A DNA stretch of 63,866 bases from Glycera tridactyla. Lineage: Eukaryota. Positions 1,246-47,914 of this stretch are shown piece after piece. The stretch's first letter is position 1, and each line of letters starts with the position of its first letter. Position numbers and translations under genes: made by a program. The notes beneath the pieces were generated by a model, which worked only from the letters and a program-made list of their open reading frames with translations, did not search any database and had not been told where the DNA came from. The stretch is taken from positions 76,136,001 to 76,199,866 of the forward strand of contig OZ286471.1 of assembly GCA_965644265.1 (NCBI GenBank), in the 5' to 3' direction.

Positions 1246-1279
1246 GGGGAAATAGAATATGTTCATTTTATTTGTTCAA

Positions 1280-4200: not shown

Positions 4201-4877
4201 CTAAGAGCCTTACTAATGGCTTTCAAATACTTATCAAGGTCGGAAAAAAGTTCATAATTTTCACAGACTCCCTGTCATCTCTGCAGGCCTTGCAGGGAAA
4301 TCTCAGGAACTGTATACTCTTGCAAATCTTGCAAGAGTATCAAATAATCAAAGATCATCAAAAGACTGTCAGACTTTGCTGGATTCCGAGCCATATCGGA
4401 ATTCCTGGAAATGAGGCAGCCGATAAAGCGGCCAAAAGGGCTCTAGGTTTGCCAGTCACTGAGATGGAAATCCATTATTCTGACTTCAAACCAAGAATAA
4501 AGCTCTATATCGACCAACTCTGGCAGAATGAATGGGGAACCAAAAAGAGAAATAAATTATATCGCATCAGACCAAAATTGGTGGACAGATTCCCCGTGAG
4601 AACTATGAATAGAAGAGAGGAGATAGTACTTTCCCGTCTGAGGATAGGACATACATATCTCACCCATTCACACCTTCTGAAAAAACAAGGCAATCCTAAT
4701 TGCTTTGCATGCGGATGCCATCTCACTGTCAAACATTTATTGCTCGACTGTAGAAAACTATCGCAAACTGGAGTAAAGTATTACACTGTAGAAAATATGA
4801 CACAACTTTTCATGAAAGTCGATCCAACAGACATATTTGGTTATTTGCATGAATTGGGAATATTTAGACAAATATGA
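1280..4877 (+). mobile_element. I-group (I/Nimb/Loa-like) LINE ORF2: APE endonuclease, RT, RNase H, C-terminal Cys/His motif; 5'-truncated, two frameshifts
   Basis: APE motifs CLQET, GDFNAH, SIDLS, SDHFPI. RT motifs QSGFRKGR, FFDMEKAYD, YVDDF. RNase H motifs FTDGS, AEL, FTDS, WIPSH..GNEAAD. C-terminal RLRIGH..C..C..H..C. Frame breaks near 3104 and 4244. Confidence 0.93.
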
Positions 4878-11519: not shown

Positions 11520-11660
11520 ATGGGCGGCTGTAAAAACTGTCTTCTGGTATGCACGGTGATGCTGGCACTAGGTGTCGCTGTTCTACTCAATGTCACCGTA
11601 CCAAAGGGCTTCCAGGAGCCGCTCAAGCTCCGTGCCTTGATGGCTACTGCAAAACTCGTG
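11520..11660 (+). CDS. AADAC-like coding exon 1 (signal anchor, MGGCKNCLLVCTVMLALGVAVLL...KLV)
   Basis: ATG preceded directly by a pyrimidine tract and AG (11518-11519). Donor GTAAGT at 11661, phase 0. Confidence 0.8.
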
Positions 11661-12561
11661 GTAAGTGTGTGTGTGCTTCTGACAGAGTGTGAGGTATTCC
11701 AAAAGTGTGATATCTTAGCAGATTTGGGGATAGTCTGGCATAGTATGGGATATTCCGGCAGCATGTGGGACATCCAAACATTGTGTGATATTCTAGCAGA
11801 GTGGCGGATACTCTGGCAGCATGTGGGATATTCCGGCAGTGTTGGATATTCTGGCAGAGTGTGGGTTATTCTGACAGAGTTCGGGATATGCTGGCATAGT
11901 GTGGAATACCCAGGTAGAGTGTAGGATATCCCAGAAAAGTGTAGGATATCCCAGCAGTGTGTGGAATATCTTGGTATAGTGTGTGATATCCTGGTAGACT
12001 GGGGGTCATTCCGACAGTGATATTCTAGCAGAGTGTGTGATATCCTGGCATAGTGTGTGATATCCTGGTAGAGTGTGGGGTATTCCGACAGTGATATTCT
12101 AGCAGAGTGTGTGATATCCTAGTAGAGTGGGGGTATTCTGACAGTGTGTGATATTCAAGCAGAGTGTGTGATATCCTGGCATAGTGTGTGATATCCTGGA
12201 TGAGTGTGGGGTATTCCGACAGTGATATTCTAGCAGAGTGTGTGATATCCTAGTAGAGTGGGGGTATTCTGATAGTGTGTGATATTCAAGCAGAGTGTGT
12301 GATATCCTGGCATATTGTGTGATATCCTGGTAGAGTGGGGGTATTCCGACAGTGTGTGATATTCAAGCAGAGTGTGTGATATCCTGGTAGAGTGGGGGTA
12401 TTCCGACAGTGTGTGATACTCAAGCAGAGTGGCATATATCCGGGTAGAGTGAGGGATATCCCTGTAGAATTCGGGATATTCTGGCAGAGTGGGGATATTT
12501 GGCAGTGATGTGACACCCACTGGGATATCTCAGTGACATTTTCTGAATGCTCTATTTTTTG

Positions 12562-13507: not shown

Positions 13508-14897
13508 CATGTATATTGCTGCTTTTCACCAGGGAGCTAAAAAACACTTAACATTGGGAATACAGATTTATATAGGTATAGATTTGTGAGAAAGATGTCA
13601 AGAGTTTATCATTTCCTTGTTTCAGCGCAGTGTTGATGAATTTATCAACGGGCCAGAAGACAGCATCAAAAACATGCGGCTTCGGATGGCAAATAAGGGA
13701 CTGGGTGCCAATAGCACGGGTGTCAAGGTGGGTATATCAAGAGAGTCCTCATCCAGAACTTAGTGCAGCTCCTTATTTCCTGCTCTGTTTAGAGAAAACA
13801 TCGCTGTTGTANNNNNNNNNNNNNNNNNNNNNNNNNNNNNNNNNNNNNNNNNNNNNNNNNNNNNNNNNNNNNNNNNNNNNNNNNNNNNNNNNNNNNNNNN
13901 NNNNNNNNNNNNNNNNNNNNNNNNNNNNNNNNNNNNNNNNNNNNNNNNNNNNNNNNNNNNNNNNNNNNNNNNNNNNNNNNNNNNATTTCAGCCATGTGAC
14001 TGCGTGTCTTGGTCCCCAAGTTCTTGTGTGCAGGGTTTGTTCTGAAGGGGACAGGGTGTCCAGCCTTCCTAGATCAGGAATATGTGGCATTTCATGATCC
14101 TACAGACTGATCAACATACACCATTAAGCTACAATTATTGAGTCAATCAAGTAGTCGATCAGTCAGCCAGTAAGTCAGTCAATCGATCAATTATTCAATC
14201 AGTCAGTAAGACAATCGATCTATCAGACAATTAATCAGACAATCAATTGATCAATGGCGGCAGTTGTGTATGTGCATTTCAGACACGTGACACGGGTTTT
14301 AACGGAGTTGATGTACGTATCTACGTGCCGGAGGCTGGGGTGGTGTCACCTGCAGCCGTCATCTTCTTCCACGGCGGAGGATGGGTGTTTGGCAGTTACA
14401 GTGAGTGGAAACTACCCCATCCTCCTCCTCCCCTTGCTCATCCTCACTCCCCCTCATCCTCTTTCTGCACCTTACCCTCCCAATCTTTTCATTCTCCCTC
14501 TCCTCTTCATCCCCCCCTCCTCCTCCTCCCCCTCCCCCTGCTCACACCCTCCTCTTCCTGCACCTTACCCATCCCATTTTCTCATTTTCCTCCGCTTCCA
14601 CCTCCTCCCCCATCTTCTCCCACAGCAGTGGATGGGTGGTGGGCTGATACCCCCTCCTCCTCCTCCTCCTCCTCCTCCTCCTCCTCCTCCTCCTCCTCCT
14701 CCTCCCCCGCCTCCTGCACCACATCCTCATCATCATCGTCATCGCCGTCATCGTCGTCGTCGTCGTCGCCACTTCTGCCGTCATCACCATCTGTCATCGC
14801 TTCACTTCCTCCTCACTTCCTCCTCACTTCCTCCTCACTTCCTCACTTCCTCCTCCTCCCCACTGTCACTGCCTCCCTACCTCCACCTTCTTCATCA

Positions 14898-14930
<33 letters not shown>

Positions 14931-17900
14931 TCGTTGTCGTCATCGACGTCTATGTCTTCATTGTCATCATCTCTGCATCATCACACTGGTGATTGTCATG
15001 CTTGTAGCCATCGAGCGCCTTATGATGTACTGAGCTGTTGCCAGTGAGTCCACGTCTTGTTGTGTTGCAGATGGGAGTTTTCATGAAATCATGCTGGAAA
15101 TGACACGCCGTCTCAAAATCACCGTTATCTCTGTCGAGTAAGTTGCATTCTGTAGAGGATAACAGGAATTAGTTCCAGGAGATTCCACCAGGGTATTTCA
15201 ATGTTGTTCCACATTTTGGCGCCTGCGATGAGTTTACCCCCGCTTACAAGAAGAGGTGGGTTGGAGTGATCCCCTTACAAATGAAAGGGGGGCCAGCTTA
15301 CATTGTAAGTGACACCTCTCCACTGGAGGTCACCAGCCAACACTCTCCCTCGCTCTTGTCAGCTGAAGCACCCCACTCCTAGCATCCGTCGTGCGCCTGC
15401 TCTTCAACCTTGTCATATATGACCTAAAACCCACAGCTGAATTCTTCCTGAAACTTGGTGTCACTTTCCTTCCCTTTTTATGAGATCAATACCATGGGAA
15501 TGAAAAGAATATTCTTCACCCCAAATACATCCGTCATACATTTTGAAAACTGGATTTTTTTCTTTACCCTTTTCACTGGTTGCCACCTTGAGCTTCCCCT
15601 TGGACTCTGTATAATCATGTCCTACTGGTCCGATTTTCAAGGAGATTGCATCAAATTCAACCCACACATGATGAATAACTGGACACCAGCTTCCTGTCAA
15701 GAGAGAGTGGGTTGTGGATCTCCAGGGAAATCAAGATCATTTCCTGGACTATCATGGACAGGTTGTTATCGCCACATGTTCGGCTGTGTTGTAGTGACCT
15801 GATTTTAGCCTGCGCGAATCCACCAGGGTCCTTGAAGAAAGCTCATCTAGCTACAGTATTTCTCAGATCACCCCAGGAGATACCTCATCAGATTGGTTCA
15901 CAAGCATTCCGCCCCCTCTTCTATCATGAGTGGAGGTGCACCACTACCTGACTGAAATAATTGATATCAATTCTAGCTGAGATAATGAGATGCATCAGAT
16001 ACGGGGGATACACAGAGCCAACGTTTTCATGCTTTTGCTTACTGAATGATTGTCCATGTCTGTTCACTGTAGCTATCACCTGGCCCCACAACAGAGAAAC
16101 TGTTATCTCCACCATTTGCCACTAGGTATCACTCTAAGCAGTAGTCACCTTACTGAATGATTGTCCCATGTCTGTTTACTGTAGCTATCACCTGGCCCCA
16201 TAAGAGGGAAACTATTATCTCCACTATTTGCCACTAGGCGTCACTCCAATCTGTAGTCACCTTACTGAATGATTGTCAATGTCTGTTTACTGTAGCTATC
16301 ACCTGGCCCCAGAACAGAGAAACTATCATCTCCACTATTTGCCACTAGGCCTCACTCTGACCAGTAGTCACCTTACTGAATGATTGTCCATGTCTGTTCA
16401 CTGTAGCTATCACCTGGCCACGGAACAGAGAAACTATCATCTCCACTATTTGCCACTAGGCCTCACTCTGACCAGTAGTCACCTTACTGAATGATTGTCC
16501 ATGTCTGTTTACTGTAGCTTTCACCTGGCCCCAGAACAGAGAAACTATCATCTCCACTATTTGCCACTAGGCGTCACTCTAACCAGTAGTCACCTCACTG
16601 AATGATTGTCCATGTCTGTTCACTGTAGCTTTCACCTGGCCCCAGAACAGAGAAACAATCATCTCCACTATTTGCCACTAGGCGTCACTCTGACCAGTAG
16701 TCACCTTACTGAATGATTGTTCAAGTCTGTTTACTGTAGCTTTCACCTGGCCCCGGAACAGAGAAAATATTATCTCCACTATTTGCTACTAGGCGTCACT
16801 CTGACCAGTAGTCACCTTACTGAATGATTGTTCATGTCTGTTTACTGTAGCTTTCCCCTGGCCCCAGAAGAGAGAAACTATTATCTCCACTATTTGCCAC
16901 TAGGCATCACTCTGACCAGTAGTCACCTCACTGAATGATTGTCCCATGTCTGTTTACTGTAGCTATCACCTGGCCCCAGAAGTGGGAAACTGTTATCTCC
17001 ACTATTTGCCACTAGGCGTCACTCCAATCTGTAGTCATCTTACTGAATGATTGTCCATGTCTGTTTACTGTAGCTATCACCTGGCCCCAGAACAGAGAAA
17101 CTATCATCTCCACTATTTGCCACTAGGTATCGCTCTAACCAGTAGTCACCTTACTGAATGATTGTTCATATCTGTCTACTGTAGCTATCGGCTGGCCCCG
17201 GAGCACCCGTACCCGACACCATTTGATGATTGTGTGGCTGCCACCAAATACCTCCTGGATAATGCAAACAACTACGGTATTGATCCTGACCGTGTGGCTC
17301 TTATGGGTAAGTAGAATAACGTAGCACGAACACATCAATATTGAATGAAATTGCTATGTACAACGAGACGGGCCTGCTGTTGGATCTCATGAGGCCTTCC
17401 CACGGCAGTTCTGCCTTGTGGTATATTGTAATTTTATTGGATATTCATACATTCTTGCATTTATACCACAGGTTATTCTGCTAAGACTTGATTTCCTGAG
17501 ATGACTACCTTTGCAATGAGACCACCGACATGATTGTCTGTCTAATTCATGGTCCTACGTTGGCTTCCTGCATTCAGTGGTTATCCTTTGCCTTCATAGT
17601 TGTCTATAAAATGTCACTTGAGAAGCTGTGGTGTCTCAGAGAAACCGTGGTATAGAGGATAACAGCATTTAGTTCTCAGAATTTCCATCTGGGTATTTCA
17701 TTGTATTGACACAAGGTGGCACTTGCACTGAGCTGACTACTACTTCTTGTTTCTATCACTACCGTGAACGCGGAAGATAATCCAAAGTGCTTTTCTGTGA
17801 TCAACATAATGTATCCAAGTCATTCAGATTATAGCTGTCCAATCAAGTACAAAACTTGCATTGTCGCCTAATATACATGTACTCGAATTGCAGCCACTGC

Positions 17901-20900
17901 ACTATGAGCTATTCAATCCTCTGATTCACTCATATCATTATTTTCTGCATTATGCCTCAAAATGGGTAATATGAAAGTATGTCCATGCCTATCTATATAT
18001 TAAGTCAATGCATATATGTATATCATAATTTGATTGAATCATTGTATTATTCATCTAGCAAATGAAAATGAACAATCAATAAGGAACATTGCCACTAGGT
18101 GTCACTCTAACTGGTTGGCACCTCACAAAATTGCTGTCGATGTCTATATTTGACACAATGCACCTTGTCAGTGTCTCTCACGCATTTGCCAATATCTGTA
18201 GTATGAAGGTCGATTAACTGAGCATCACATATATTCATTTATTTATAGATAGGAGTGCCATGACCAATCATGTATGTGTACTAAAAAATACTAACTACCA
18301 ATTACTGATAAACTGCTGTCATTTGGGGTCTTGTATGCCCGTCAGAGGCCGGGGGTCTATCTGCAATATACGCTAACAGAAAAATGCTGAATTATAAAAA
18401 ATAATTGTATGACCTATGACTCGAAAATGAAAATTTGTTATTGTTTTTGTTGTTAGTTCATCATCATCATGAATTCTATTGTCAATACTGTGACATTTGG
18501 TTGCTAGGTGACAGTGCAGGTGGTAACCTAGCAGCGGCAGTTTCCCTGCTGCTGAGAGATGAAGACTACGACTACCAGCCCAAGCTACAGGTTCTGCTGT
18601 ACCCAGCACTGCAGGCGGTCGACTTCCTCACACCATCCTACCAGCTCTACCACCATGAGTGCCTACTCTCCAAACCTCTCATGGTCCGCTTCTGGTTATG
18701 GTGAGTAATGGCACCATGCATGATTCTTTTCAACATACCAGAATTTTAACTATATCTCAATGATAATTCTGGTGAACCATCTTTCGTAATAGTGAGATAG
18801 GACCTAAGTACCTTTTAGTGAAACAGGGTTCTAAAAAGGTTTAGAAATTCTGCCAGACAGAACATACAAGGGTTGGCTGGATGACATATTTCTGAAATGT
18901 GTTGTCTGATGTTCAGAGTTTGGCTCAGGGGCCAGCCTTCCATGGGCCTCAGGTGGGTTGGTTGCCATGGAGAATTGTGCAATGTTGTCATCTACTTTGG
19001 TTGTGACCTACAATAAAAACACTGATGAAGCAGATCACTTTGGGCACTTCTACTACTTGCTCATGGTTGTGGTGGTCTTACCTGCTTTCTCAGCCCTCCC
19101 TACCAGCCTGCAACCATACCTCACTGTACTCTGCCACAGACATCAAGATTCATTCGCTAGGGAATCTATTTAGTTAGATTGGTGGCCATAGTTTCTAGAT
19201 GACTGACAGAGATATTCAATCATATTTTCTCACACAGAGATAGGTTTAGCATTTCATATGTGTTGATTTTCTGTTTGAAGCATGATGCTGAAATATCTGA
19301 GGACATCATGATGAGTTCTCAGTCAATCAGAGTATTCTCTGTCCGATTTTGCACTGGTCATCGATCAAGTATGCATTTAATATGTCACATTCAACAGTAA
19401 ATGCCATATTAATTGCCGATACACAAGTGGAATCATATCTCAAGGTCAATGAGCATCCTGGACCGGCGTGCAATGGGTCTGGGGTTCAATCCCCGGTCCT
19501 ACCATGCAGGAATGTTTCACCCCCATCTTCGCTCCTCCTTGGCAGGTGGTCTGATTTAGCCTACTCAAGTGCAGAAAGTGGACATTATGCCCAGGCAGTG
19601 GAAGATTTATTCACTATGTAACTAAAAGCTGCAAATTTTGAAACAGGATTCTGGTGAAATATTGAATTTAATTGAATTTCTTTATTCAAAAAGCAATGAA
19701 CATATGTCATCCTACATGCATGTTTGGTCAATTTCATAAACGTAGGCAGGAATCTCTAATACACGAACTTGAAGAGAAAATAAAAAAAGTATATAGATAA
19801 ATCGAATAGGCAATAAACAGATGCCAATATTTAAATAAGATAGAATTAGCTTGTGCTTATTTAAACAGAAAGTGTATTGAAATACCAAAATGTCTTCTCC
19901 AATAAATGAAATTGAAACCGAGCACATAGTATGTACTCCTATGGTCTCTGCACTCCTGAAACCTTGATGACTTTTCTTGGTGGTATTGCTCTTTCAGTAT
20001 GTGATATGATACGACTGTTTAGGTATGCATTTGGTGACCTGGATGACTTTGAAGAAGCCATGATCAACATGCATACATCACCTGATGTGAAGAAACAGTT
20101 ATCAGCCAGCAGATTGGACCATGCAACCCTAGGTGTCAACACTCAGTCATCACAGTCCGACTATGAGGAGACTGACCTGGACTCTGGTAACAGCACTCTC
20201 TGGGCTGAGATAGTTGACCTGTTTGAGGACCCCTATTATGCGCCCCTGATGGCTGATGACCTCAGCGGTCTACCAAAGGTTAGCTTCATCAATTATATTT
20301 TTGGAATGAATCTCATTTCAACAATTGCAATCTTTCGTCGCCTTCACTGATCAGCTGCTAATGTATATGAGGAACATTGATTTGAAACATAGTGAAGATT
20401 TTCAGAACAAATGTTGCGCTAGATTGAACAAAGAATTGAACAAATTACCTACACATTTCTAAGGGCTGTTTTTTGGATGTTTTTGTGAAGCTCATTTGGA
20501 AGTTGACATTTTTTAATCCAACCAAAAATTGAGTATTTTTCAGACCGTATTTATTTTCTAATTTGAATGATGTGTTTTTTTCAAAGCATCGCTATCAGGG
20601 TTGGGTGTCATCTTCCAGAGATTTACATGGTCATGAATGCCATCTCATGGTGCATCAATTAATTTGATGTAGGTGGAGGTGCGTCTGAACTGTCAGCTTA
20701 TTACTTGCACATGACAATTTGTTTTGGTTCACACCAGGGTGTGTAGGTTAAAGCCTGCTAACACTGCAACCAACCGAGCAACCAAAACCCCCAGAAATGA
20801 CACCTTCTGTGTCTGCGAATATAATAGATCTTCCGTTGGGGACCCCGAAGGAGTCTTGGATGATCTCATTCATGCCTATTGCATGGGTGTCTTAATATAG

Positions 20901-21296
20901 CCCAGATGATGTTGAGCAGGTGCAGGACGACTATGCAACTGACCAACCGATCAAAACAACCAACCAATCATCCTATTTTATCCTACCGAAAAATACACAA
21001 CTGAGGATACAAAAAATATTTTTTACAGTAGCATTCATCAGTCCGAAATGACTCAGTCACTGAAATCATTTCACCCAGTATATTTGTGTGTATTGCAGGC
21101 TTATGTGCTGACGGCCGAACAGGACGTCCTGCGTGATGACAGTATCTGGTATGCGCAGCGATTACACGCAGCCGGAAACGATGTCACACATATACACCTG
21201 GACTATGCCTTCCATGGTCTCCTCACTATGAACATGTTCAAAGATTATCATCGTGCATGGCAGAACGTCTATCAATACGTCGAGAAGGAACTGTAA
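11520..21296 (+). CDS. AADAC/NCEH1-like GDXG (HSL-family) carboxylesterase, 8 coding exons, 398 aa, apparently intact (gene span including introns)
   Basis: Exons 141+102+118+67+122+193+256+198 = 1197 nt, all GT-AG with compatible phases. N-terminal hydrophobic anchor, HGGGW oxyanion motif, SVDYRLAPEHPYP, GDSAGGN nucleophile, DVLRDD acid and FHG histidine. Orthology not established. Confidence 0.92.
11700..12530. repeat. Intronic minisatellite, about 19-bp subunit (AGAGTGTGTGATATCCTGG-like) with larger periods
   Basis: GTGATATTCTAGCAGA recurs at 12017, 12091 and 12222. Confidence 0.85.
12567..12757. repeat. (AC)n, (ACG)n and (AGG)n microsatellites
   Basis: Seen directly. Confidence 0.95.
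12877..13466. mobile_element. MITE with 26-bp perfect TIR inside a (TA)n microsatellite
   Basis: CTGTAGTCTCGCGCGTGTACGCGCAG / CTGCGCGTACACGCGCGAGACTACAG, with (TA)n on both sides. Confidence 0.88.
13626..13727 (+). CDS. AADAC-like coding exon 2 (RSVDEFINGPED...STGVK)
   Basis: TTTCCTTGTTTCAG acceptor, GTGGGT donor, phase 0-0, open frame. Confidence 0.7.
14283..14400 (+). CDS. AADAC-like coding exon 3 (HGGG motif)
   Basis: TRDTGFNGVDVRIYVP...IFFHGGGWVFGSY; TTTCAG acceptor, GTGAGT donor. Confidence 0.92.
14420..14990. repeat. Low-complexity (CCT)n/(CAT)n/(CGT)n tract
   Basis: Seen directly; explains the poly-Ser/Pro/His ORFs here. Confidence 0.9.
15071..15137 (+). CDS. AADAC-like coding exon 4 (GSFHEIMLEMTRRLKITVISV)
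   Basis: TTGCAG acceptor, GTAAGT donor, phase 1-2; joins exon 5 to give SVDYRLAPE. Confidence 0.88.
16040..17184 (+). repeat. 111-bp tandem array derived from the intron 4/exon 5 junction (10 extra acceptor copies)
   Basis: CTGTAG|CT at AG ends 16072, 16184, 16295, 16406, 16517, 16628, 16739, 16850, 16962 and 17073; the true acceptor is at 17184. Confidence 0.95.
17185..17306 (+). CDS. AADAC-like coding exon 5 (YRLAPEHPYPTPFDDC...RVALMG)
   Basis: Conserved HSL-family segment; donor GTAAGT at 17307. Confidence 0.93.
18508..18700 (+). CDS. AADAC-like coding exon 6 (GDSAGGN nucleophile)
   Basis: GDSAGGNLAAAV...QVLLYPALQ; TTGCTAG acceptor, GTGAGT donor. Confidence 0.95.
20023..20278 (+). CDS. 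AADAC-like coding exon 7
   Basis: YAFGDL...DPYYAPLMADDLSGLPK; TTTAG acceptor, GTTAGC donor. Confidence 0.9.
21099..21296 (+). CDS. AADAC-like terminal exon 8 (catalytic Asp and His)
   Basis: AYVLTAEQDVLRDDS..FHG..EKEL*; TTGCAG acceptor. Confidence 0.93.
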   Translation, partial: AYVLTAEQDVLRDDSIWYAQRLHAAGNDVTHIHLDYAFHGLLTMNMFKDYHRAWQNVYQYVEKEL

Positions 21297-21524
21297 ACAA
21301 CAATGTGAAGATTATTTCAGACAATACTCGACATCTGTTAGAAGACATCAGAAGGAAAAATATCTATTACTGCTTGAAGTCGTTTTATCTATAAAAAAGT
21401 GGGAGTGTGTATTTATACGGTTTTATCATTCAACTGAACTGCATTGAGAGGGCTCATCTGTACCTTCGAGAACTCTGTTTTACCTGAACAGTTTTCTCAT
21501 CCATCTTCAAAAATGTGAAAGAGG

Positions 21525-21530
21525 AATAAA
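21525..21530 (+). terminator. Candidate polyadenylation signal of the AADAC-like gene
   Basis: First AATAAA I found after the stop codon, about 230 nt downstream; no transcript support. Confidence 0.35.
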
Positions 21531-22039
21531 AGATAACGATGTTCAGATCCAGGATCTCATCCATTCATTTCCTACTCGAACACTCACAGATTCAAACCAA
21601 GTGTTTGATGCCTGGATCAGGATCGGGATTGGGATCACTCACTGTTTTCTTTTGTTACCCAGCTGGCTACTAACAATTTTCTTATGAAAAAACCCCAATA
21701 ATCTACATAATTTGTCTCTAAATGGTGAGCGCCTGTGATCCCACTTTCCAACCTACCCGGGACCGTTTGACATCTCAAGATTTTAACATCAAAATCTCAT
21801 CAGATGGGATTATTTATTTTTTTCGATCACATTGATGGCTTGTTGTTGTATTTTTTCTACTTCCATGACGTTGTTGTTCATTTTCTGTGGTTGTTTATAT
21901 TTCGAGAAATATGTGTGTTTGATTCTGAATGTGAAGTGGATGATTCGGAAAATAAAGAATTATATTCTTTCATGAATAATGAATGAATCTTATCACAATG
22001 CATGACAAACAACAGTGCATGTCTCTGTGTTATACAATG

Positions 22040-23470
22040 CAACCCAGACCAAGTATGGATACCAAAATGTGACATAGATCAAGTATGGACATCACAATGT
22101 GAAATAGAGTAAATATGGACATCACAATGTGACCTAGTTCATGTATGGTCATCACAATGTGACCTAGATCGAGTATGGACACCACAATAAGAAATGAATT
22201 AGACATGGTCATCACGATGTGACATTAGCAGAGATGCCAACCATTACGATTTTGGCGTAATGATTACGATTTTCACCCCCATATTACGCCATTACGATCT
22301 GGTAGTCAATTATTACGCTTTTTGGAGGTGACTGGTACTGCACCCTGCTACAGTCCATTCCATTTCATAATGTGACTCCCTAATGCCTCACGCCTACTCA
22401 CCAGAGTGGCATCATTTGGGCATACTCCAATGGAAACTATACTAACTGTGAAGGGAGCCAACTATAGGTAAATTCTTCGGTCAAGGGGCTCCTGTTGAGC
22501 GAGGGTGTTGTCCCCATGACAACCACTTGCCAGCAACACTCCCATCCCTACCCCTCACCCGGCAACATCCCAGAGACATTAGATAGGGAGACGCATCATT
22601 CTAGTAGGGTACAAGATAATCTGTTCCATAATACCCCTGCAGGTTAGAGTATTATATGCTGTGCCACTGACCATTTTTTCATGGCCTTCAAGCAAAGAGC
22701 CTATACAAGCTCTTTGCTTCAAGTCAGGTTTCATTGAGCAGTCTGATAAGTGCCCCCCCCCCCCACCCTCCTCTCTCGTGCGGAAAGTTGGCATCTCTGC
22801 ATTAGGTATGTGACATACATTAAGTATGGACATCACAATTCGACATCGATTTGGTATTTGATATCACAATATGGCGGCGGTCAGTTGGGTCGGAGTGACA
22901 TTGAGTCCTTCCTAACCAATCGCAATATGGCATTGATCAGGTATGAATATCACAATGGTGCATTGATTAGGTATGAATATCACAATATTGTATTAATTAG
23001 GTATGAATATCACAATGTGGCATTAATTAGGTATGAATATCACAATGTTGCATTGATTTATGTATGAACCCCACAATGTGGCATTGATTAGGTGAGGACC
23101 CCACAATGTGGCATTGATTAGGTGAGAACCCCACAATGTGACATGGATTAGGTGAGGAGCCCACAATGTGACATGGTTTAGGTGAGGACCCCACAATGTG
23201 GCATTGATTAGGAGAGGACCCCACAATGTGGCATTGATTAGGTGAGGACCCCACAATGTGGTATTGATTAGGTGAGGACCCCACAATGTGACATTGATTA
23301 GATGAGGACCCCACAATGTGGCATTGATTAAGTGAGGACCCCACAATGTGACATGGATTAGGGGAGGACCCTATAATGTGGCATCGATTAGGTAGGGACA
23401 GCACAATGTTGCATGGATTAGGTATGGACCCCGCAATGTGACATTGATTAGGTATGAAGAGCCATTGATC
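22040..23470. repeat. 30-bp minisatellite (CACAATGTG core), interrupted by a MITE; a related array lies at 34130-34440
   Basis: CCCACAATGTGGCATTGATTAGGTGAGGAC-type units at 22920-23470; GTATGGACATCACAATGTGACATAGATCAA-type units at 22040-22225. Confidence 0.9.
22229..22799. mobile_element. hAT-like MITE, 13-bp TIR CAGAGATGCCAAC, flanked by a CATTAG duplication
   Basis: TIRs at 22229-22241 and 22787-22799; CATTAG at 22223-22228 and 22800-22805. Confidence 0.8.
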
Positions 23471-23819
23471 AAGTTGGGGATACAGATGGGGGAGTCTTGA
23501 ATGAGCCAACCCATGTCCATTGCATGGGCATCCAGGTATAGCCTAGATGGTACGCACATCTGGGACATGAGGCAATCGATCGATCAAGCAACAAGTCTAT
23601 TAATCAGACATTAAATGTCACTATAAATATAATGAGATGAGCTTATTTCAAGGATTGGTATGAAAGAATAGGGTTTCGAAAATGAACCCGAGATAATGAG
23701 GAGTCAGAGAGATTTTCAAATAGAGGCAGCTGCCAGTTCAGGTGCACCACCATCTGAAATAGTAGAGGTAATCCTAGCTAATCTTGCAACAAAACGAAAA
23801 GCAAATCCACCAGTATGAA

Positions 23820-25799
23820 GGGATATGCCACTAGGTGATATTCTAACCAGTAGTCACTTTACTGAATAGTTGTCTATTCACTTTAGCTATTGCCTGGCTG
23901 CAGAACAGACATACTATCATCTCCACTGGTTGCCATCAGGTGTCACTCTAACCGGTAGTCACCTCAGCGAATGATTAGGCCTATTCGACTGGTTGATTTC
24001 GTTGAGTGTGCGTTGGCAGAAATGTAGCCCATCCGAAAAGCAAAACGTGCTCAACGACCCGGCCATACTCAGCAAAACTGACCAGTCAAATGGGGCAATT
24101 GTTCATGTCTATTTACTTTAGCTATCAGCTGGCTGCAGAACAGAAAGACTATTATATCCACTGAGTGCCACCAGGTGACAATCTAATGGCTAGTCACCTC
24201 ACTGAATGGTTCTCTATCTACTGCAGCTATCAGCTAGCTGCGGGACAGAGAAACTATTATATCCACCAGTTGCCACTGGGTGTCACTCTAACCAGTAGTT
24301 ACCGCACTGAATGATTGTTCATGTCTGTTTACTGTAGCTATCGGCTGGCTGCGGAACAGCTGAACTATCATATCCACCAGTTGCCACTGGGTGTCACTCT
24401 GACCAGTAGTTACCACACTGAAAGATTAATCATGTCTGTTTACTGTAGCTATCGGCTGGCTGCGGAACAGCTGAACTATCATATCCACCAGTTGCCACTG
24501 GGTGTCACTCTGACCAGTAGTCACCTTACTGAATGATTGTTCATGTGTGTTCACTGTAGCTATCGGCTGGCTGCGGAACAGCTGAACTATCATATCTACC
24601 AGTTGCCACTGGGTGTCACTCTAACCAGTAGCTACCACACTGAATGATTGTTCATGTCTGTTTACTGTAGCTATCGGCTGGCTGCGGAACAGCTGAACTA
24701 TCGTATCCACCAGTTGACACTGGTGTCACTCTAACCAGTAGTTACCACACTGAATGATTGTTCATGTCTGTTTACTGTAGCTATCGGCTGGCTGCGGAAC
24801 AGCTGAACTATCGTATCCACCAGTTGACACTGGGTGTCACTCTAACCAGTAGTTACCACACTGAATGATTGTTCATGTCTGTTTACTGTAGCTATCGGCT
24901 GGCTGCAGAACAGCTGAACTATCATATCCACCAGTTGCCACTGGGTGTCACTCTGACCAGTAGTCACCTTACTGAATGATTTTTCATGTGTGTTCACTGT
25001 AGCTATCGGCTGGCTGCGGAACAGCTGAACTATCATATCTACCAGTTGCCACTGGGTGTCACTCTAACCAGTAGCTGTGTCACTCTAACCAGTAGCTACC
25101 ACACTGAATGATTGTTCATGTCTGTTTACTGTAGCTATCGGCTGGCTGCGGAACAGCTGAACTATCGTATCCACCAGTTGACACTGGTGTCACTCTAACC
25201 AGTAGTTACCACACTGAATGATTGTTCATGTCTGTTTACTGTAGCTATCGGCTGGCTGCGGAACAGCTGAACTATCGTATCCACCAGTTGACACTGGGTG
25301 TCACTCTAACCAGTAGTTACCACACTGAATGATTGTTCATGTCTGTTTACTGTAGCTATCGGCTGGCTGCAGAACAGCTGAACTATCGTATCCACCAGTT
25401 GCCACTGGGTGTCACTCTAACCAGTAGTCACCTTACTGAATGATTGTTCATGTCTGTTTACTGTAGCTATCGGCTGGCTGCGGAACAGATGAACTATTAT
25501 TTCCACCAGTTGCCACTGGGTGTCACTCTGACCAGTAGTCACCTTACTGAATGATTGGTCATGTCTGTTTACTGTAGCTATCGGCTGGCTGCAGAACAGC
25601 TGAACTATCATATCCACCAGTTGCCATTGGGTGTCACTCTAACCAGTAGTCACCTTACTGAATGATTGGTCATGTCTGTTTACTGTAGCTATCGGCTGGT
25701 TGCGGAACAGATGAACTATTATTTCCACCAGTTGCCACTGGGTGTCACTCTGACCAGTAGTTACCGCACTGAATGATTGTTCGTGTCTATTTACTGTAG
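23820..25799 (+). repeat. Second 111-bp acceptor array (13 conserved plus about 3 degenerate units) upstream of pseudogene exon 5
   Basis: CTGTAG|CTATCGGCTGG at AG ends 24337, 24448, 24559, 24670, 24780, 24891, 25002, 25134, 25244, 25355, 25466, 25577 and 25688; degenerate copies at 23886, 24121 and 24226. Confidence 0.95.
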
Positions 25800-26009
25800 C
25801 TATTGGCTGGCCCCTGAGCACCCATACCCGACACCATTTGATGATCGTGTAGTCGCTACTCAATACCTCCTGCCGAATGCAAACAAGTACGGTATTGATC
25901 TCAGGCGTGTGGCTCTTATGGGTAAGTAGAAGAATGAAGCAAGAACGCAAGAAAAATGTCAGGAGTGGATTCTGATTTACTTATCAGAGAGAGTGTGAGA
26001 AACCAAAGT

Positions 26010-26800
26010 GGGGTCATATATTTCCTCAACATTACCGGTCAAATGTGAGGTCCCTCAAGGATCTATATTTGAGCCACTTTTGTTTAGTCTATATATCAAT
26101 GACATACCGGCCAGGTGAGGTGCTCCAACTGTAATCTACCTTCAGCAGTTGAGATGAGTTTGGAAGCAGATACATTATTGTATCCAGACGCCATTATTGT
26201 AGTCATACCCACCAGATATTCTAAGAAATAACCTGAATGCCATTTTGTGTGCAGTTATCAGATGGATACAACTGAATCGATTGTCGTTGAATTTAAAGAA
26301 AACACACTATATGTTACTCGGGCTTCCAACCCATTGTCTGAGTTTGTTGACTTCGATCTATCTGTAAACGCAGTGAATCTTGAGGGGGTTGTGTGTATGA
26401 AGTATCTCGGTATATACCTTGATCCTTCACTCACATTCAGACACCACGTTGCTCATTTTAGATCAAAAACGCTTGGCAAGATTGGCGTCACTATTACTGT
26501 ATACAACACTGTATACCACATTATTTGATTATGGTGACATAACTTTCAACTGTTTGTCCCCACGTGACAAGCTCACAGAAGCTACAGAATATAGCTTTAC
26601 GGTGTATTGCCAGAAGGCCTTGGCGCTACAGTACGAGACAGTTACATCCTGACCTGCAGATAGTAACAGTGAAGCAGCCGCGTGATGAACGTAACACTCA
26701 TCACGAACAACTTTTTCAGCCACTCTCCCGCCGGGGGAGCAGACTGGAAAAATCACTCTCCCGTAAAAGATTCACTCCCCCGAATTTCTTCAAAGAGTGC
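26010..26800 (+). mobile_element. Degenerate CR1/L2-type LINE RT fragments
   Basis: EVPQGSIFEPLLFSLYINDIP (about 26047-26108) and KYLGIYLDPSLTFRHHV..FDYGD, broken by stops and frameshifts. Confidence 0.7.
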
Positions 26801-27794
26801 AAGGAAAACAAGCTCAAAGGAGGCTATCCTGAGAGTAAGTTATTTGTGTGAGTAAATGCCTTATGATGTGAATTTCAAGTTATCCATCAGGTGACTGACT
26901 ATCTAAGTAACACCAAGCATTTTCTGCTCAGGTTCATCCTTCAGAATCGAACTCGTGCAGGTATATGAAAAGTCATCTTGCAAGGAATGGTGTTTTTTGT
27001 TGTAGGAGTCAGGATTGTGTTGTTCTGTCATCACAAAAAATTTATAACTTTCCGATCAACTAAATAATTCACACTCTCCCATCTACAGAGTGAGTCTGGT
27101 CTTTTGTCATGATAAGATACACATGAAGAAAATACTGAACTCTGTCAAATCCAAATGTGGCGGGTACGTTTCAGACGCTAACTTCGTCAATGCTCGTCTG
27201 ATTTGGCATTTAATGGCACAAATAGGTGGTACAGATCCTCCGGCGATTATCGATCCTGGTCTCGGGTAGTCTGCCTGCTTTAGAAGAGGATTATGCGAAC
27301 ATTTCATTGCATTTCTTTGGCGAATCCGCCACCATTATCGGCGTTTATTTGTATGCGAAACAGTGAAGATACGGCCGCCGCACACACCACGAAACCAGTG
27401 TGAAATTAACATATTTTGCGTTCTAAGGTGAAATATACAAGTGAACCTCGTCGAGACCACGATTAAGCTTGACAGACTTTATCTGGATCTTATACAGCAA
27501 ATCCAAGTTGTGAATGAATCGACATCGATCATTCACATGGCACTCGCTCCCGCTTATTGCCTTCGGTCAAGATTCATAGGGTAAAGTACAAAATGTCTGA
27601 AAATATTCCGATATCGTGCAGCAAAGGCCTGGGATGATCATGTGAAAAATATTCCCTGTCTCATTGGAAATGGACAATGATGCTTTCAAAAACCATTTAC
27701 GAGCACTTGGGTTCAGTAAGACACTGTCTCCATGTCAATGCACCGACTCACCAATACACTCATATATTGACATATCTATATTCTGTTCAATGCA

Positions 27795-30095: not shown

Positions 30096-33000
30096 TGCAT
30101 GTATGTATTGCATATACTGGAAATTCGTCATCAATCCTCCGATATTTGGTTGCTAGGTAAAAGTGCAGGGGCTAACCTAGCAGCAGCGGTGTCCATGCTG
30201 CTGAGAGATGAAGACTAGGACTACCAGCCCAAGCTACAGGTCCTGATATACCCCCCACTACAGGCGGTCGACTTTCTCACACCCTCTTACCAGTTCTACC
30301 AGCATGAGCGCTCACTCTCCAAAACTATCATGGTTCGCTTCTGGCTCTGGTGAGTAATTGTAAAATGCAACGATGCTCTCTAACATTCCATGATCTTGAC
30401 AATATCGATGAAAATTCTGGTGAATCATACTTCACAATATTGAAACAGGGCCCAAGCCTGCTGCCACTCATGCCTTCCTGGGGCAGGCTACTTGGCAGGT
30501 GTCCTTTGGGCACTTCTAATACTGGGTTGTGAGTCTGGTGGTCTTACCTGCTTTCTTAGCCCCCCCCCCCCCCCCCCACGGCCTGCAAATATACCTTACT
30601 GTACTCTACCATGGACATTAACAGTCATTCACTGAGCCACAGTGATCAAAATAATTTCTCTTCAGTTGCTAAATGACTGATAAAAAATACAATCAAAATT
30701 AATGAAATACAGATAGAGTATAGCATTTCATATATGATGATTTTCTGTTTTTAAGAATTTTTAAATATTATAAAACATCATAATGTTTTTTTCACTAAAT
30801 CAGAGTATTCTCTGCAATGAATCTGTCACATCCAATAGTAAATGTCATATTACGTAGCCGATAAATGCTTGGAATCATATCTCGAAATTAATGAGATGGC
30901 AACAGGAAGTAGGAATCACCTCACTGCAAGTGCCAACTTGTTGAACTCAATTCTGTTAACTCCGTATGGTGGAGACCCTGTGGAGTGCCCAGGGAAGAAT
31001 AGGCCCCACATGCTTCCATATGTGTCGTTAGAGGGGACTAAGTAGGAGCTCAGAGATGACACTGAGTGTTTGTGAATTTCATATATTGTTGCCCGCTGTA
31101 AGGGACCCAGAAGGAGGGGTCTTGAATGATCCACTCATGCCCATTGTATGGGTGTCACAATATAGCAGAGATGGTGCTGACATGTCAGTTAACCCCAAAC
31201 AAACAAACGAACAACAAACAAGGAATGAAATCGGATTATCTCATTAATCTCATCGATCATTTATTCAGATCATTATGGTCATCCTCGACCAGGAATTGAT
31301 CCCATTCACCCCATATATCTAGGACAGTTCATAGTGTTGTGCAATTCACCAAACAAATTATCGGATAGCTGGAATGGCTTTGATGTGAATAGAAAGCCAG
31401 AAACCATTCCTGACATACCTACACTTTATCACCAGCCATTGAGGAGTGAGGATCAAACCCATACATAACTCTTTTGGTCTATCGCTGGTCTTAGTGCCTG
31501 ATGTCATAATAAAAGCTATATAAATTACACAGTTTGGTGCTGCCAATATACATTTCAAAACATTGCACATTGTGACATCAACGTGGATATCCAGTGTACC
31601 AATCCTAGTTTCACAGAGGGACACAGTTACCACAAAATGTCTGACCTACTGGCTGCCATTTAGTTCAGTGATCTCTGCACTCTCAAATCAGTAATGATTT
31701 TTCAGATTGGGATTTCATTTACAGTACATGATATGATATGTCTGTTTAGGTATGCATTTGGTGACCTGGATGACTTTGATGAAGTCATGATCAACATGCA
31801 CACATCACATGAGGTGAAGAAACAGTTATCAGCCTGCAAGTTGGACCATGCAACCCTAGGTATCAGCACTCAGTCTGACTATAAGGAGACTGACCTGGAC
31901 TCTGGCAACAGCACTCTCTGGGCTGAGATAGTCGACCTGTTTCAGAACCCCTACTTCCCGCTCTTGATGGCTGATGATTTCAGCCATCTTCCAAAGGTTA
32001 GCATCATCGATTATATACTCTATCCTACGATGTTAATTTCGATCACCCTATTATCAATGTCTTTTTCACAAATTCTTGCAAGATGGAGATAAATCGAGCA
32101 GTAGATAAATCAATTCATCATAAATCATCCCATCAACTTCATGGCCACCATTTTACACACAAATAACACGCACATTTCTTAGAGTTGATGTTTTTAAATG
32201 TCTCAAAAGAGCTCGTTTGAGGTTGACATTTTGTAATCCAACCCGAAATTGAGTATTTTCAGACTATATTCAGTTTCTTGTTTTGAACAATTTGCTTGAT
32301 CAAAGCATTGCTATTAGGGTTTGGTGTCAGCTTCCAGCTACTCACATGATCATGAATGCCATCTAACAGTCTATCAATTGATTTGATGTTGATAGAGGTG
32401 TTTCTGAACTGTCAGCTATCTACTTCCACTTGACAATTTGTTTTGGTTCCCCATCATTCTGTACTCAGACTCAGGGTGTGTGCGTTGAAGCCTGCAGTGG
32501 ATAGAGCATTCATCCCTCATCGATCTTAGAACTCTTGACTTGAATTTGAATTTGGAACTTTTATTTTAGCTCTTTGTGAGAAGGTCCTGGGAGATCATAT
32601 CTTTCCCATAAAAGCACAAAATAGACATATGCAAATACAGATGGCATATAACATGGTACATAATGGTATATGATAAAATGACATGTATGGATAAGAAGAA
32701 ATCAGATCAAATATTTCCAAACAAANNNNNNNNNNNNNNNNNNNNNNNNNNNNNNNNNNNNNNNNNNNNNNNNNNNNNNNNNNNNNNNNNNNNNNNNNNN
32801 NNNNNNNNNNNNNNNNNNNNNNNNNNNNNNNNNNNNNNNNNNNNNNNNNNNNNNNNNNNNNNNNNNNNNNNNNNNNNNNNNNNNNNNNNNNNNNNNNNNN
32901 NNNNNNNNNNNNNNNNNNNNNNNNNNNNNNNNNNNNNNNNNNNNNNNNNNNNNNNNNNNNNNNNNNGCACTTAGGTAGGTAAATATCTCGACTATAGAAG

Positions 33001-34519
33001 TATTATTGTTGGTGGAAAGCTGTGATCAGCTATTCCTTGGCTGCCGCACATGCATAATTCTTCGGTTTAATGCGCAGCATTGTACTCCAACGATCCAACC
33101 AACCAGACAACCATAAACCCTCCGGAATGACACCTTGAATTTCAGTTTCTCCTCCCATTATGAACCCAGAAGGAGAAATCTTGGATGATCCTACTCATGC
33201 CCATTTGCATGGGTGTCTCAATATAGCCCAGATGGTGTTAACAAGACGTTAAACAATCGACCGATCAATCAATCAAAACAAGTGACCATCCAACCAAACT
33301 CTTTTGTATATTTCTGTGTATTGCAGGCTAATATAATGACAGCCGAGTAGGACGTTCTGCGTGATGATAGTACCTGGTATACGCAAAGATTACATGCAGC
33401 TAGAAATGACGTCACGCATGTACACATGGAGTTTGCCTTCCATGGTCTTCTCACTATAATCACATTCGAAGACTGTCATCGTGCATGGCGGAACGTCTAA
33501 GGATATGTTGAGAAGGAACTGTAAATAACTCTGTGAAGATTATTATAATCAATATTCAACATCTGTTGAAAAGTAAATCAGAAGGGAAGATATTCACTAC
33601 TGCTTGAAGTCATTTTATCTATAAAAAGTAAGAGTGTGTATTAAAAGAGACTTTCAAAAAACACTGTTCGAGTCTAGTATCTCATTGGTTTTCCTCTTCC
33701 TACTTGAGCACTCACAGAATCAAACAAAGTCTTGGATCTCTGAACCTGGATCGGGATCACTCACAATTTTCTTTTGGTACCCAGCTGGCTACTAACAATT
33801 TTCATATGTAAGAATCAATAATTCACTTAATTTGTCTCCACATCGTGAGCGCATGTGATCCAAATTTCCAAGATCAAAATCCCATCAAATGGGTTCATGA
33901 ACATTTTTCTCGATCACATTGATGAATTGATGTGGTCTTTTCTCTACTTTAATGACGTTGTTCATTTTCTGTGATTGTTTATATTGCAAGAAATATGTGT
34001 GTTTGTTTGTGAAGTGGAAAATTCTGAAAAAAAAAGAATTATATTCTTTCATGAATAATGAATGAATCCTATCGCAATGCAGCAAGAACAGTACAAGTCT
34101 GGGTGTTACAATGCTACTCGGAATAAGTATGGATATCTAAATGTTGCATAAATCAGGTATGAGTATCACAATGTAACAATGATTGGGTGTGGACATCCCA
34201 ATGTGAAATGGACATCCCGATGTGACAAGGTCAAGTATGGACATCACAATGTGACATCAATCATGTATATGGTCATCAAAATGTGACATAGATCAAGTTT
34301 AGACATCTCAATGCGACATATATTATGTATTGATATCATGATGTGGCATAGATCAAGTATGGACAACACGATATTGCATTGATTAGGTATGGCCATCGTA
34401 GTATGACAAGGATCAAGTATGGACATGATAATGTGGTACAGCTCATGCAATAGCACCACAATTTATCATATAGTCCTTGTGCTTCCAGGCTGCCTAATAA
34501 CAAAGGGCTCAAGAGAACA

Positions 34520-47538: not shown

Positions 47539-47592
47539 TGAACAAACCCCGAACACAAGAAAGAAGAGGTGGAGTCTTGGGGAAGGTGGTGG

Positions 47593-47914
47593 GCAATCTA
47601 ATCGAAAGTGAGACCGAGATACAGTCGACGCCACGTTATATACCCCACGGCAGCGCCCTCTACATAGTCAAAATCTGAAACAAAATTCTTTAAATGAAAC
47701 ATTTTGTAACAAACAATTACAAATACAAAAAGGTAGAAGGTTCGCTAATGGTACGTAAATTCTAAATTGTTTGAAGAAGGAATCCGAGAGAAAAACGAGA
47801 GAGGAGAACCACCCCCCTCCTCTCAAACATGATCACGTGATCTAACCAGTTCTCTCGGTCACGTGTTTCTGCTCCAATTTACGAAAAATTTATTTTTAAA
47901 TAAAAATATGATTT
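47593..47914 (-). repeat. Split direct repeat A2 (322 bp)
   Basis: Matches 53894-54215 at offset 6301. Confidence 0.95.

What the first reader, a model, noticed from the sequence alone, without database searches (positions are those of the whole stretch)
16040..17306. Satellite built from a 3' splice site: ten decoy acceptors stacked in front of the real exon 5
Seen: each 111-bp unit contains the intron end (..ACTGAATGATTGT.CATGTCTGTTTACTGTAG) plus about 22 nt resembling the exon start (TAT CAC CTG GCC CCA GAA CAG vs the true TAT CGG CTG GCC CCG GAG CAC). Only the last acceptor leads into the real exon and its GTAAGT donor. The unit is exactly 37 codons, and each carries an in-frame TGA (ACT GAA TGA), so upstream acceptor use gives a premature stop before the catalytic Ser. 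Units 1 and 10 also contain CACTAG|GTAT, an AG|GT resembling a recursive splice point. Inference: a copy-number-variable poison-acceptor array could tune esterase output through NMD, or it tests how exon definition picks the last acceptor. I know of no description of this arrangement but cannot search.
Basis: partly seen in the sequence, partly recalled or inferred. Interest (0 to 1): 0.85.

Follow-up and report, generated by a model that had tools for sequence, protein, structure and literature searches.

The report
Splice-acceptor "mirage" minisatellite in esterase intron
A 111-base piece spanning the end of an intron and the first 22 bases of an esterase exon has been copied ten times in a row, giving ten look-alike splice acceptors; this kind of repeat is already known as a "mirage" in amphioxus, and here it looks like a tolerated by-product of repeat instability rather than a regulator.

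Summary
A 111-bp tandem array (10.5 units, 16038-17199) repeats the last ~89 nt of an intron, its CTGTAG acceptor and the first ~22 nt of exon 5 of an intact arylacetamide-deacetylase-like esterase gene. All ten decoy acceptors match the real one (AG 17183-84) in pyrimidine tract, branch-point candidates and AG-free zone. Each would lead to a stop within 28 codons.

That paralogue is a 5'-truncated pseudogene with three in-frame stops. The two arrays share unit length, phase and derived bases. They differ from each other (19/111) as much as the flanking paralogous DNA does, and their units fall into two array-specific groups on a tree. So the array predates the duplication, evolves in concert, and persists without any gene to regulate.

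Such arrays are published as "mirages" in amphioxus (Adh3, globins, TnC, PGBD5), where splicing is reported normal. Donor-side versions exist in human F7, 6-16 and CBS. This scan has already noted the same kind of array in three other pieces of this genome.

No transcript of this gene could be found, so acceptor choice is inferred. Verdict: new member of a known kind; regulatory reading unsupported.

The parts
16038..17184 (+). 111-bp acceptor minisatellite (array 1). It holds 10 decoy acceptors at 16072, 16184, 16295, 16406, 16517, 16628, 16739, 16850, 16962 and 17073. The last unit ends in the real acceptor AG at 17183-17184.
   Evidence: TRF; BLAST of the unit against the window; acceptor list; unit alignment
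17185..17306 (+). Exon 5 (exon C) of the esterase gene, encoding (D)YRLAPEHPYPTPFDDC...ALMG. It is followed by the donor GTAAGT at 17307.
   Evidence: Pfam Abhydrolase_3, E=1.3e-12; tblastn with the Pecten AADAC-like protein; sequence
15071..15137 (+). Exon 4 (exon B). Its donor GT at 15138 must pair with the acceptor at 17184.
   Evidence: Sequence and reading frame
11520..11660 (+). Exon 1 (ATG, membrane anchor, VPxGxxEPxKL motif), with donor GTAAGT at 11661.
   Evidence: tblastn with the N-termini of homologues; sequence
14283..14400 (+). Exon carrying the HGGG oxyanion-hole motif (exon A, probably exon 3).
   Evidence: Motif scan; tblastn; splice sites
18508..18700 (+). Exon 6 (exon D), carrying the catalytic motif GDSAGG.
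   Evidence: Pfam Abhydrolase_3, E=7.4e-12
20023..20278 (+). Exon 7 (exon E).
   Evidence: tblastn; splice sites and frame
21099..21296 (+). Last exon (exon F), with DVLRDD and the catalytic His region, ending in the stop codon.
   Evidence: Pfam; tblastn
23823..25799 (+). Paralogous 111-bp acceptor minisatellite (array 2). It has about 17 acceptor-bearing units. The first three are degenerate, with a ~125-nt insertion between the first two. It also has a four-unit higher-order repeat.
   Evidence: TRF
25800..25921 (+). Exon C' of the pseudogene copy (YWLAPEHPYP...).
   Evidence: tblastn, 80% aa identity to exon C
30153..33521 (+). Remaining pseudogene exons: D' (30153-30350), E' (31745-32008) and F' (33318-33521). 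They carry three in-frame stops, and GDSAGG has become GKSAGA. No copies of exons 1-4 lie upstream.
   Evidence: tblastn; relative-rate comparison
18089..18145 (+). Solo 57-nt fragment of the unit's intronic part (79% identity) in the next intron.
   Evidence: BLAST; alignment

Best explanation
This is a 'mirage' minisatellite. A roughly 111-bp segment made of the last ~89 nt of the intron and the first ~22 nt of exon 5 was duplicated in tandem, then amplified and homogenised by unequal exchange or replication slippage. This happened before a segmental duplication produced the downstream pseudogene copy. The array lies wholly inside the intron. The splicing machinery most likely uses the last acceptor, for two reasons. 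That acceptor is the only one followed by the real exon body and, 122 nt later, by the only strong donor (exon definition). The decoys can also fold into a local hairpin that the real site lacks. Any use of a decoy would give a stop codon and probably mRNA decay, so the array is at most a small cost to the gene. It is a by-product of repeat instability, not a regulatory device. Shown: the anatomy, the shared origin of the two arrays, concerted evolution, the intact host gene and the dead paralogue. Inferred: which acceptor is used, and neutrality.
For: Array anatomy.

Host gene: it is intact, with canonical GT-AG junctions and the HGGG and GDSAGG motifs.

Second array: it sits at the identical boundary of a paralogue that lacks exons 1-4 and carries three in-frame stops. 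That paralogue is more diverged from an outgroup than gene 1 is, at 64-65% against 77-81% aa identity.

Shared origin: both arrays have the same unit length and phase, and both read GAACAG where both real exons read GAGCAC.

Rate of divergence: the two array consensus sequences differ at 19/111 sites. The two real terminal units also differ at 19/111, and the flanking paralogous DNA is 74-83% identical.

Concerted evolution: the tree puts the core units of the two arrays on opposite sides of one branch (support 87/89); two degenerate edge units of array 2 fall outside its core group. The real terminal unit of array 1 is the outlier of its array. Array 1 shows a 7-unit duplication and array 2 a 4-unit one.

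Not coding: all six reading frames are closed in every unit.

Hairpin: decoys fold into a hairpin around the AG. MFE is -8.5 to -19.5 kcal/mol in array 1 and -19 to -27 in array 2. The real acceptors fold less well than their shuffles (z +1.3 and +1.65).

Literature: amphioxus mirages, including an acceptor-side one in globin BflGb6, do not disturb splicing and show concerted evolution with edge units excluded (PMC3087553; PMC3902484). In human F7, only the authentic site next to the exon is used among identical copies (PMC1557585).
Against: No RNA evidence could be obtained for this gene, so acceptor choice is inferred.

The decoys are indistinguishable from the real site in pyrimidine content (13-14 of 20), in branch-point candidates (CTTAC/CTCAC at about -32 in all, CTRAC at -47 in most) and, in nine of ten, in the ~39-nt AG-free zone. 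Decoy 10 lies only 233 nt from the donor, so some leakage is plausible. In human 6-16 and CBS the proximal pseudo-sites are indeed used.

The last 35 intron bases differ less between the two arrays (3/35) than the rest of the unit does (16/76). My estimate is that this difference is not significant; I did not run a test.

The hairpin is weak in the functional gene's array (z from +1.6 to -2.3, only one unit beyond -2) and strong in the pseudogene's. That fits a mutational property of the repeat better than a selected mask.
Confidence: 0.8

Rival explanations
1. Regulatory poison-acceptor array. Decoy acceptors capture a share of transcripts, or hold spliceosomes unproductively. The products are removed by NMD, and copy number sets esterase output.
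For: All ten decoys look as strong as the real site and all lead to a stop. Decoy 10 is within exon-definition range of the donor. Arrays of this kind vary in length (PMC3087553). Proximal pseudo-sites are used in human 6-16 and CBS.
Against: The same array is at least as large in front of a pseudogene exon that has no upstream exons to splice from. The two arrays diverged at the flank rate. Published mirages splice normally. Earlier scan notes report several other such arrays in unrelated genes of this genome, which points to a mutational habit rather than a gene-specific device. I did not check those notes myself.
Confidence: 0.08
2. A dispersed satellite or a repeat derived from a transposable element landed in the intron next to the exon. 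The resemblance to the exon start is secondary, for example through gene conversion.
For: A solo 57-nt fragment of the intronic part of the unit lies in the next intron at 18089-18145. The unit contains an imperfect inverted repeat.
Against: Within the 64-kb window the unit occurs only at the two homologous exon boundaries plus that one fragment. Homology runs without a break from the intron into a conserved coding motif, YRLAPEH. The inferred ancestral unit matches the exon at 20/22 positions. There is no Rfam hit and no match in the metagenome scan.
Confidence: 0.04
3. Assembly artefact. The array, or its length, is a product of misassembled repeats.
For: A published amphioxus mirage was misassembled in a draft genome (PMC3087553). 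The window contains several N gaps.
Against: Units carry ordered, unit-specific variants and higher-order duplications. Two independent arrays with array-specific substitutions lie at homologous sites. There are no N runs in or next to either array.
Confidence: 0.04

Closest known systems
Amphioxus 'mirage' minisatellites, especially the acceptor-side array of globin gene BflGb6 (Ebner et al. 2010, PMC3087553; first named for Adh3 by Canestro et al. 2002)
   Same: A tandem array whose unit is the 3' end of an intron plus the 5' part of the next exon. Units are of about 100-160 bp. The real exon sits at the proximal end. There is concerted evolution inside the array, with the boundary units left out. 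AG/GT signals are repeated.
   Different: Here there are 10 units (3-6 in BflGb6), in an esterase gene of a genome that is not amphioxus: the best protein matches are about 50-60% identical, to scallop proteins. A paralogous pair of arrays dates the structure to before a segmental duplication. Splicing could not be checked here.
Human donor-side boundary minisatellites: F7 IVS7 37-bp VNTR, 6-16 (IFI6) intron 2, CBS IVS13, LMNB2, PDGF (Borensztajn et al. 2006, PMC1557585)
   Same: A minisatellite whose terminal unit spans an exon-intron boundary, so that an authentic splice site is accompanied by many identical pseudo-sites. The site next to the exon is normally the one used.
   Different: Those arrays repeat donors, not acceptors. 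In 6-16 and CBS the two nearest pseudo-sites are used. The 5'-to-3' scanning mechanism shown for F7 cannot simply be carried over to acceptors.
Poison exons / regulated unproductive splicing coupled to NMD
   Same: Use of an alternative site would introduce a premature stop.
   Different: Known cases are single, conserved, regulated events supported by RNA evidence. Here there is neither RNA evidence nor extra conservation, and the array persists at a pseudogene.
Intron gain by tandem duplication across an AG|GT proto-splice site (Rogers model; potato RdRp case, PMC4974935)
   Same: A tandem duplication that includes splice signals. The first and last units contain CACTAG|GTAT.
   Different: No new intron has formed here. 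The AG|GT matches the donor consensus at only 5 of 9 positions and lacks the +5 G (my own count).

Membership tests
Mirage minisatellite (tandem duplication of an intron-exon boundary) | Head-to-tail array with a minisatellite-sized unit | tested here: met
   Period 111, 10.5 copies, 91% matches
Mirage minisatellite (tandem duplication of an intron-exon boundary) | The unit spans an intron-exon boundary, so the splice signal is reiterated | tested here: met
   Each unit holds a branch-point candidate, a pyrimidine tract, CTGTAG and about 22 nt of exon start
Mirage minisatellite (tandem duplication of an intron-exon boundary) | The authentic site is the copy that adjoins the exon body | tested here: met
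   The gene model by homology keeps frame only through 17184 into exon 5 and its donor
Mirage minisatellite (tandem duplication of an intron-exon boundary) | Concerted evolution within the array, with boundary units escaping homogenisation | tested here: met
   Identity is 92-94% within arrays and 81% between them. On the tree the real terminal unit of array 1 is the outlier of its array, and the degenerate edge units of array 2 fall outside its core group
Mirage minisatellite (tandem duplication of an intron-exon boundary) | Regular splicing is not disturbed (decoys silent) | not testable with these tools
   No same-species transcript or protein was found
Mirage minisatellite (tandem duplication of an intron-exon boundary) | Length instability or polymorphism | tested here: inconclusive
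   The evidence is indirect only: 10 against 15-17 units in the two paralogues, and multi-unit duplications inside both arrays. No second haplotype or individual was available.
AADAC/NCEH1-like alpha/beta-hydrolase fold-3 esterase (host gene) | Abhydrolase_3 domain with the HGGG oxyanion motif, the GDSAG catalytic Ser, and the Asp/His regions | tested here: met
   PF07859 hits on three exons; motifs; colinear with the Pecten AADAC-like protein over residues 85-401; N-terminal anchor exon
NMD-coupled regulatory splice element (poison site) | Sequence conservation beyond the neutral expectation | tested here: not met
   Divergence between the arrays (19/111) equals that of the terminal units and flanks. 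The array is retained at a pseudogene
NMD-coupled regulatory splice element (poison site) | Observed alternative junctions that respond to NMD inhibition | not testable with these tools
   No RNA data could be reached
Recursive splice site | A strong 3' splice site joined to a strong regenerated 5' splice site (AG|GTAAGT-like) | tested here: not met
   CACTAG|GTATCA/GTATCG occurs only in the first and last units and matches the donor consensus at 5 of 9 positions (my count). The scan for donor-like sites with at least 7 of 9 matches within 260 nt downstream of each acceptor found only the real donor at 17307

The most novel reading that the evidence does not exclude
The array acts as a copy-number-dependent damper. 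Decoy acceptors that escape their local hairpins engage the spliceosome, yielding NMD-targeted or intron-retaining transcripts, so that array length (and perhaps temperature or helicase activity acting on the hairpins) sets esterase dosage. A broader version is that this lineage has a special mutational mechanism that amplifies splice junctions. Earlier scan notes hint at that; I did not test it here.
Probability: 0.07. Interest if true: 0.6.

Novelty: new member of a known kind. Interest (0 to 1): 0.3.

Why it matters
The array gives a natural eleven-way competition between near-identical acceptors, the mirror image of the human F7 donor model. It could therefore be used to ask how an acceptor is chosen when sequence cannot decide. 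The paralogous pair adds something the published cases lack, namely evidence that such an array can sit at a working splice site of a constrained gene for a long time (about 17% sequence divergence). Together with other notes from this scan, it suggests that mirages are common outside cephalochordates. As a single locus without RNA data, it is an ordinary example of a described phenomenon.

Tried and rejected
RNA evidence. I made three word-index protein searches: the exon A region inside a long open frame, a profile of the Pecten protein plus all exons, and a short profile of exons B-D. I also made one exhaustive HMMER search with exon D and two exact look-ups of window ORFs. None found a same-species protein or transcript. 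The best hits were two short contigs from one ENA metagenome carrying a related gene (70-77% identity). They do not reach exon C.

A metagenome scan with a 30-nt pattern from the unit found nothing. Scan notes searched by sequence were blank.

An Rfam scan of 14000-27000 gave only sub-threshold chance hits.

I tested whether the remainder of the unit (positions +23 to +76) derives from the exon. No convincing homology was seen by eye or by alignment. The unit is better read as -89 to +22.

I tested whether the 20-bp minisatellite that starts 16 nt after the exon 1 donor is a donor-side mirage. The best local match to the boundary was reached by 21 of 300 shuffles, so this is not established.

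A coding repeat or an antisense gene is rejected: stops occur in all six frames of every unit.

The original Canestro 2002 paper is not in the held library. It is cited through PMC3087553.

Full report
1. Observation

Tandem Repeats Finder reports a 111-bp array of 10.5 copies with 91% matches and no indels at 16038-17199. Reading the sequence and listing every TACTGTAG|CT context gives ten decoy acceptors. Their G positions are 16072, 16184, 16295, 16406, 16517, 16628, 16739, 16850, 16962 and 17073. The real acceptor is at 17184. Spacing is 111 nt, and 112 nt in two units that carry an extra C.

Each unit contains the intron end and an exon-like start, CTATCACCTGGCCCCAGAACAG. The true exon start is CTATCGGCTGGCCCCGGAGCAC, so 17 of 22 bases match. 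BLAST homology to the unit runs to 17205, 21 nt into the exon.

In the exon's frame every decoy meets a stop after 28 codons (ACT GAA TGA). Unit 2 meets one after 5 codons. CACTAG|GTAT is present only in the first and last units. The one correction is that two units are 112 nt, so the array is not in frame from end to end.

2. The host gene

The exon after the array encodes (D)YRLAPEHPYPTPFDDC...ALMG. It hits Pfam Abhydrolase_3 at E=1.3e-12. The nearest named protein is arylacetamide deacetylase-like from the scallop Pecten maximus. Using that protein and other homologues, I placed the following exons:
- exon 1, 11520-11660 (ATG and membrane anchor)
- the HGGG exon, 14283-14400
- exon 4, 15071-15137
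- exon 5, 17185-17306
- the GDSAGG exon, 18508-18700
- exon 7, 20023-20278
- the last exon, 21099-21296

All junctions I placed are GT-AG and keep the reading frame. One short exon between exon 1 and the HGGG exon was not found. It may lie in or near the masked stretch 13812-13984, which I did not try to fill. The gene looks intact.

No close relative exists in the protein collections: the best identities per exon are 40-77%. The species is therefore poorly represented, and it is not amphioxus. Earlier scan notes call the genome annelid-like; I did not test that.

3. The second array

TRF also reports a 111-bp array of 15.3 copies at 24098-25811. Degenerate units reach back to 23823, and a ~125-nt insertion lies between the first two. 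This array ends in an acceptor at 25799, in front of a paralogous exon at 25800-25921 (YWLAPEHPYP..., 80% aa identity to exon 5).

The downstream paralogous exons are at 30153-30350, 31745-32008 and 33318-33521. They carry three in-frame stops, and the catalytic motif reads GKSAGA. No copies of exons 1-4 lie upstream of array 2.

I used a related gene on a metagenome contig (L001) as an outgroup. Gene 1 is 77-81% identical to it at the amino-acid level and gene 2 only 64-65%. Most changes are therefore on the gene 2 lineage. Gene 2 is a 5'-truncated pseudogene.

The duplicated segment runs from the 111-bp array to a 30-bp satellite downstream of the last exon: 21569-22225 matches 33697-34289. 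The left breakpoint of the duplication thus lies in or at the array.

4. History of the arrays

The units of both arrays align in one register. Both have the same length and phase, and both read GAACAG where both real exons read GAGCAC. Independent origins would need the same breakpoints and the same two changes twice over. One array therefore existed before the segmental duplication. Combining the two consensus sequences gives an ancestral exon-like part that matches the functional exon at 20 of 22 positions.

The two consensus units differ at 19 of 111 positions. The two real terminal units also differ at 19 of 111, and the flanking paralogous DNA is 74-83% identical. Units are 92-94% identical within an array and 81% between arrays.

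A maximum-likelihood tree puts the core units of the two arrays on opposite sides of one branch (support 87/89). Two degenerate edge units of array 2 fall outside its core group. The real terminal unit of array 1 is the outlier of its array. Units 2/9 and 3/10 of array 1 are sister pairs, which indicates a seven-unit duplication. Units 6/10, 8/12 and 9/13 of array 2 pair up likewise, a four-unit higher-order repeat. This is ordinary concerted evolution by unequal exchange.

The unit is best read as intron -89 to exon +22. I found no convincing homology between the rest of the unit and the exon beyond +22.

5. What distinguishes the real acceptor

Nothing in the immediate signal does. All eleven sites have 13-14 pyrimidines in the 20 nt before the AG and a CTTAC or CTCAC at about -32. 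Most also have CTRAC at -47, and all but one have an AG-free zone of about 39 nt or more. There are two differences.
- The only donor with at least 7 of 9 consensus matches is GTAAGT at 17307. It is 122 nt from the real acceptor, 233 nt from decoy 10 and more than 340 nt from the others. Exon definition would therefore favour the real site.
- Each decoy sits in a local hairpin formed by ATGATTGTyCATGTCTGTT before the AG and AACAGnnrAACTATCAT after the exon-like part. The second arm is created by the unit junction, so it is absent at the real exon.

Folding -40 to +45 around each site gives the following:
- decoys of array 1: -8.5 to -19.5 kcal/mol (z from +1.6 to -2.3)
- decoys of array 2: -19 to -27 kcal/mol (z from -0.8 to -4.5)
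- the two real sites: -12.5 and -10.3 kcal/mol (z +1.3 and +1.65)

The hairpin is stronger in the pseudogene's array. I therefore read it as a property of the repeat that may favour slippage, not as a selected mask. It could still help to keep the decoys quiet.

6. Mechanism and rivals

Most likely (0.8) this is a near-neutral mirage minisatellite in which the last acceptor is used. I could not obtain RNA evidence for this gene. Three protein searches, one exhaustive HMMER search and two exact look-ups found no same-species product. A DNA pattern scan of metagenomes was empty.

It is weakened by three things: the array's persistence and growth at a dead gene copy, divergence at the flank rate, and the published record.

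A dispersed or transposon-derived satellite (0.04) is unlikely. In 64 kb the unit occurs only at the two homologous boundaries plus one 57-nt fragment at 18089-18145.

An assembly artefact (0.04) is unlikely, given the ordered variants in two independent arrays.

No frame is open through a unit on either strand, and Rfam finds nothing.

7. What is known

Ebner et al. [quoted passage not shown] The name 'mirages' comes from Canestro et al. 2002 on Adh3. [quoted passage not shown] It has units of 150-160 bp, three or six copies in two haplotypes, concerted evolution with the boundary units excluded, and normal splicing by RT-PCR.

Pavelitz et al. 2013 (PMC3902484) add TnC and PGBD5. [quoted passage not shown]

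Borensztajn et al. 2006 (PMC1557585) list human donor-side cases: 6-16, CBS, LMNB2, PDGF and F7. They show that in F7 only the authentic site next to the exon is used among identical copies. In 6-16 and CBS the two nearest pseudo-sites are also used.

The arrangement is thus described, and the idea of using it to study splice-site choice has been carried out on the donor side.

Earlier notes of this scan report the same kind of array in three other pieces of this genome, in VWA5A-like, chitin synthase and sodium/glucose transporter genes. They say RNA showed use of the genuine site in two of them. I took the name and the first paper from those notes and checked the papers myself. I did not check their RNA claims.

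8. Verdict

This is a new member of a known kind. The useful additions are the paralogous pair, which dates the array and shows it needs no function to persist, and the junction-created hairpin, which separates the decoys from the real site.

Noticed in passing
window 11677-12505: Intron 1 of the same esterase gene starts, 16 nt after its GTAAGT donor, with an ~800-bp minisatellite (20-bp units in a 131-bp higher-order repeat). Some units read CTGGTAGAGTG, which resembles the exon 1 end plus donor. The match is not better than shuffles (21 of 300 reach it), so a donor-side mirage is not established.
   Followed up: partly
window 18089-18145: A solo 57-nt fragment of the intronic part of the 111-bp unit (79% identity, without the exon-like part) lies in the next intron, about 360 nt before the GDSAGG exon. 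Its origin is unexplained.
   Followed up: partly
window 16038-17184 and 24227-25799: Every decoy acceptor can fold into a hairpin whose 3' arm is created by the junction between units. The real acceptors cannot. The hairpin is much stronger in the pseudogene's array (z down to -4.5) than in the functional gene's array.
   Followed up: partly
window 22046-23458 and 34220-34369: A 30-bp satellite follows the last exon of both paralogue copies. In copy 1 it has grown to 18 units and lies just before array 2, so the tandem segmental duplication is bounded by satellites on both sides.
   Followed up: no
L001:310-1478 (ENA metagenome contig ERZ23486739 scaffold_128081): A related esterase gene (about 76% nt identity in exon D) has the counterparts of exons 7 and 8 fused, with no intron between them. 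This is an intron presence/absence difference among relatives or paralogues.
   Followed up: no
window 14401-15070: The intron after the HGGG exon is nearly all low-complexity CCT/TCG/CT-rich repeats. It stays open for 260-270 codons in two frames, which gives false long ORFs.
   Followed up: no
window 1259-4877: A non-LTR retrotransposon with endonuclease, reverse transcriptase and RNase H pieces, split over three ORFs.
   Followed up: partly
window 46879-54215: A tyrosine-recombinase retroelement on the minus strand (integrase-like SAM domain, reverse transcriptase and a GDSL-lipase-like ORF). It has two pairs of 100% identical direct repeats: 46879-47538 = 47911-48570, and 47593-47914 = 53894-54215.
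   Followed up: partly
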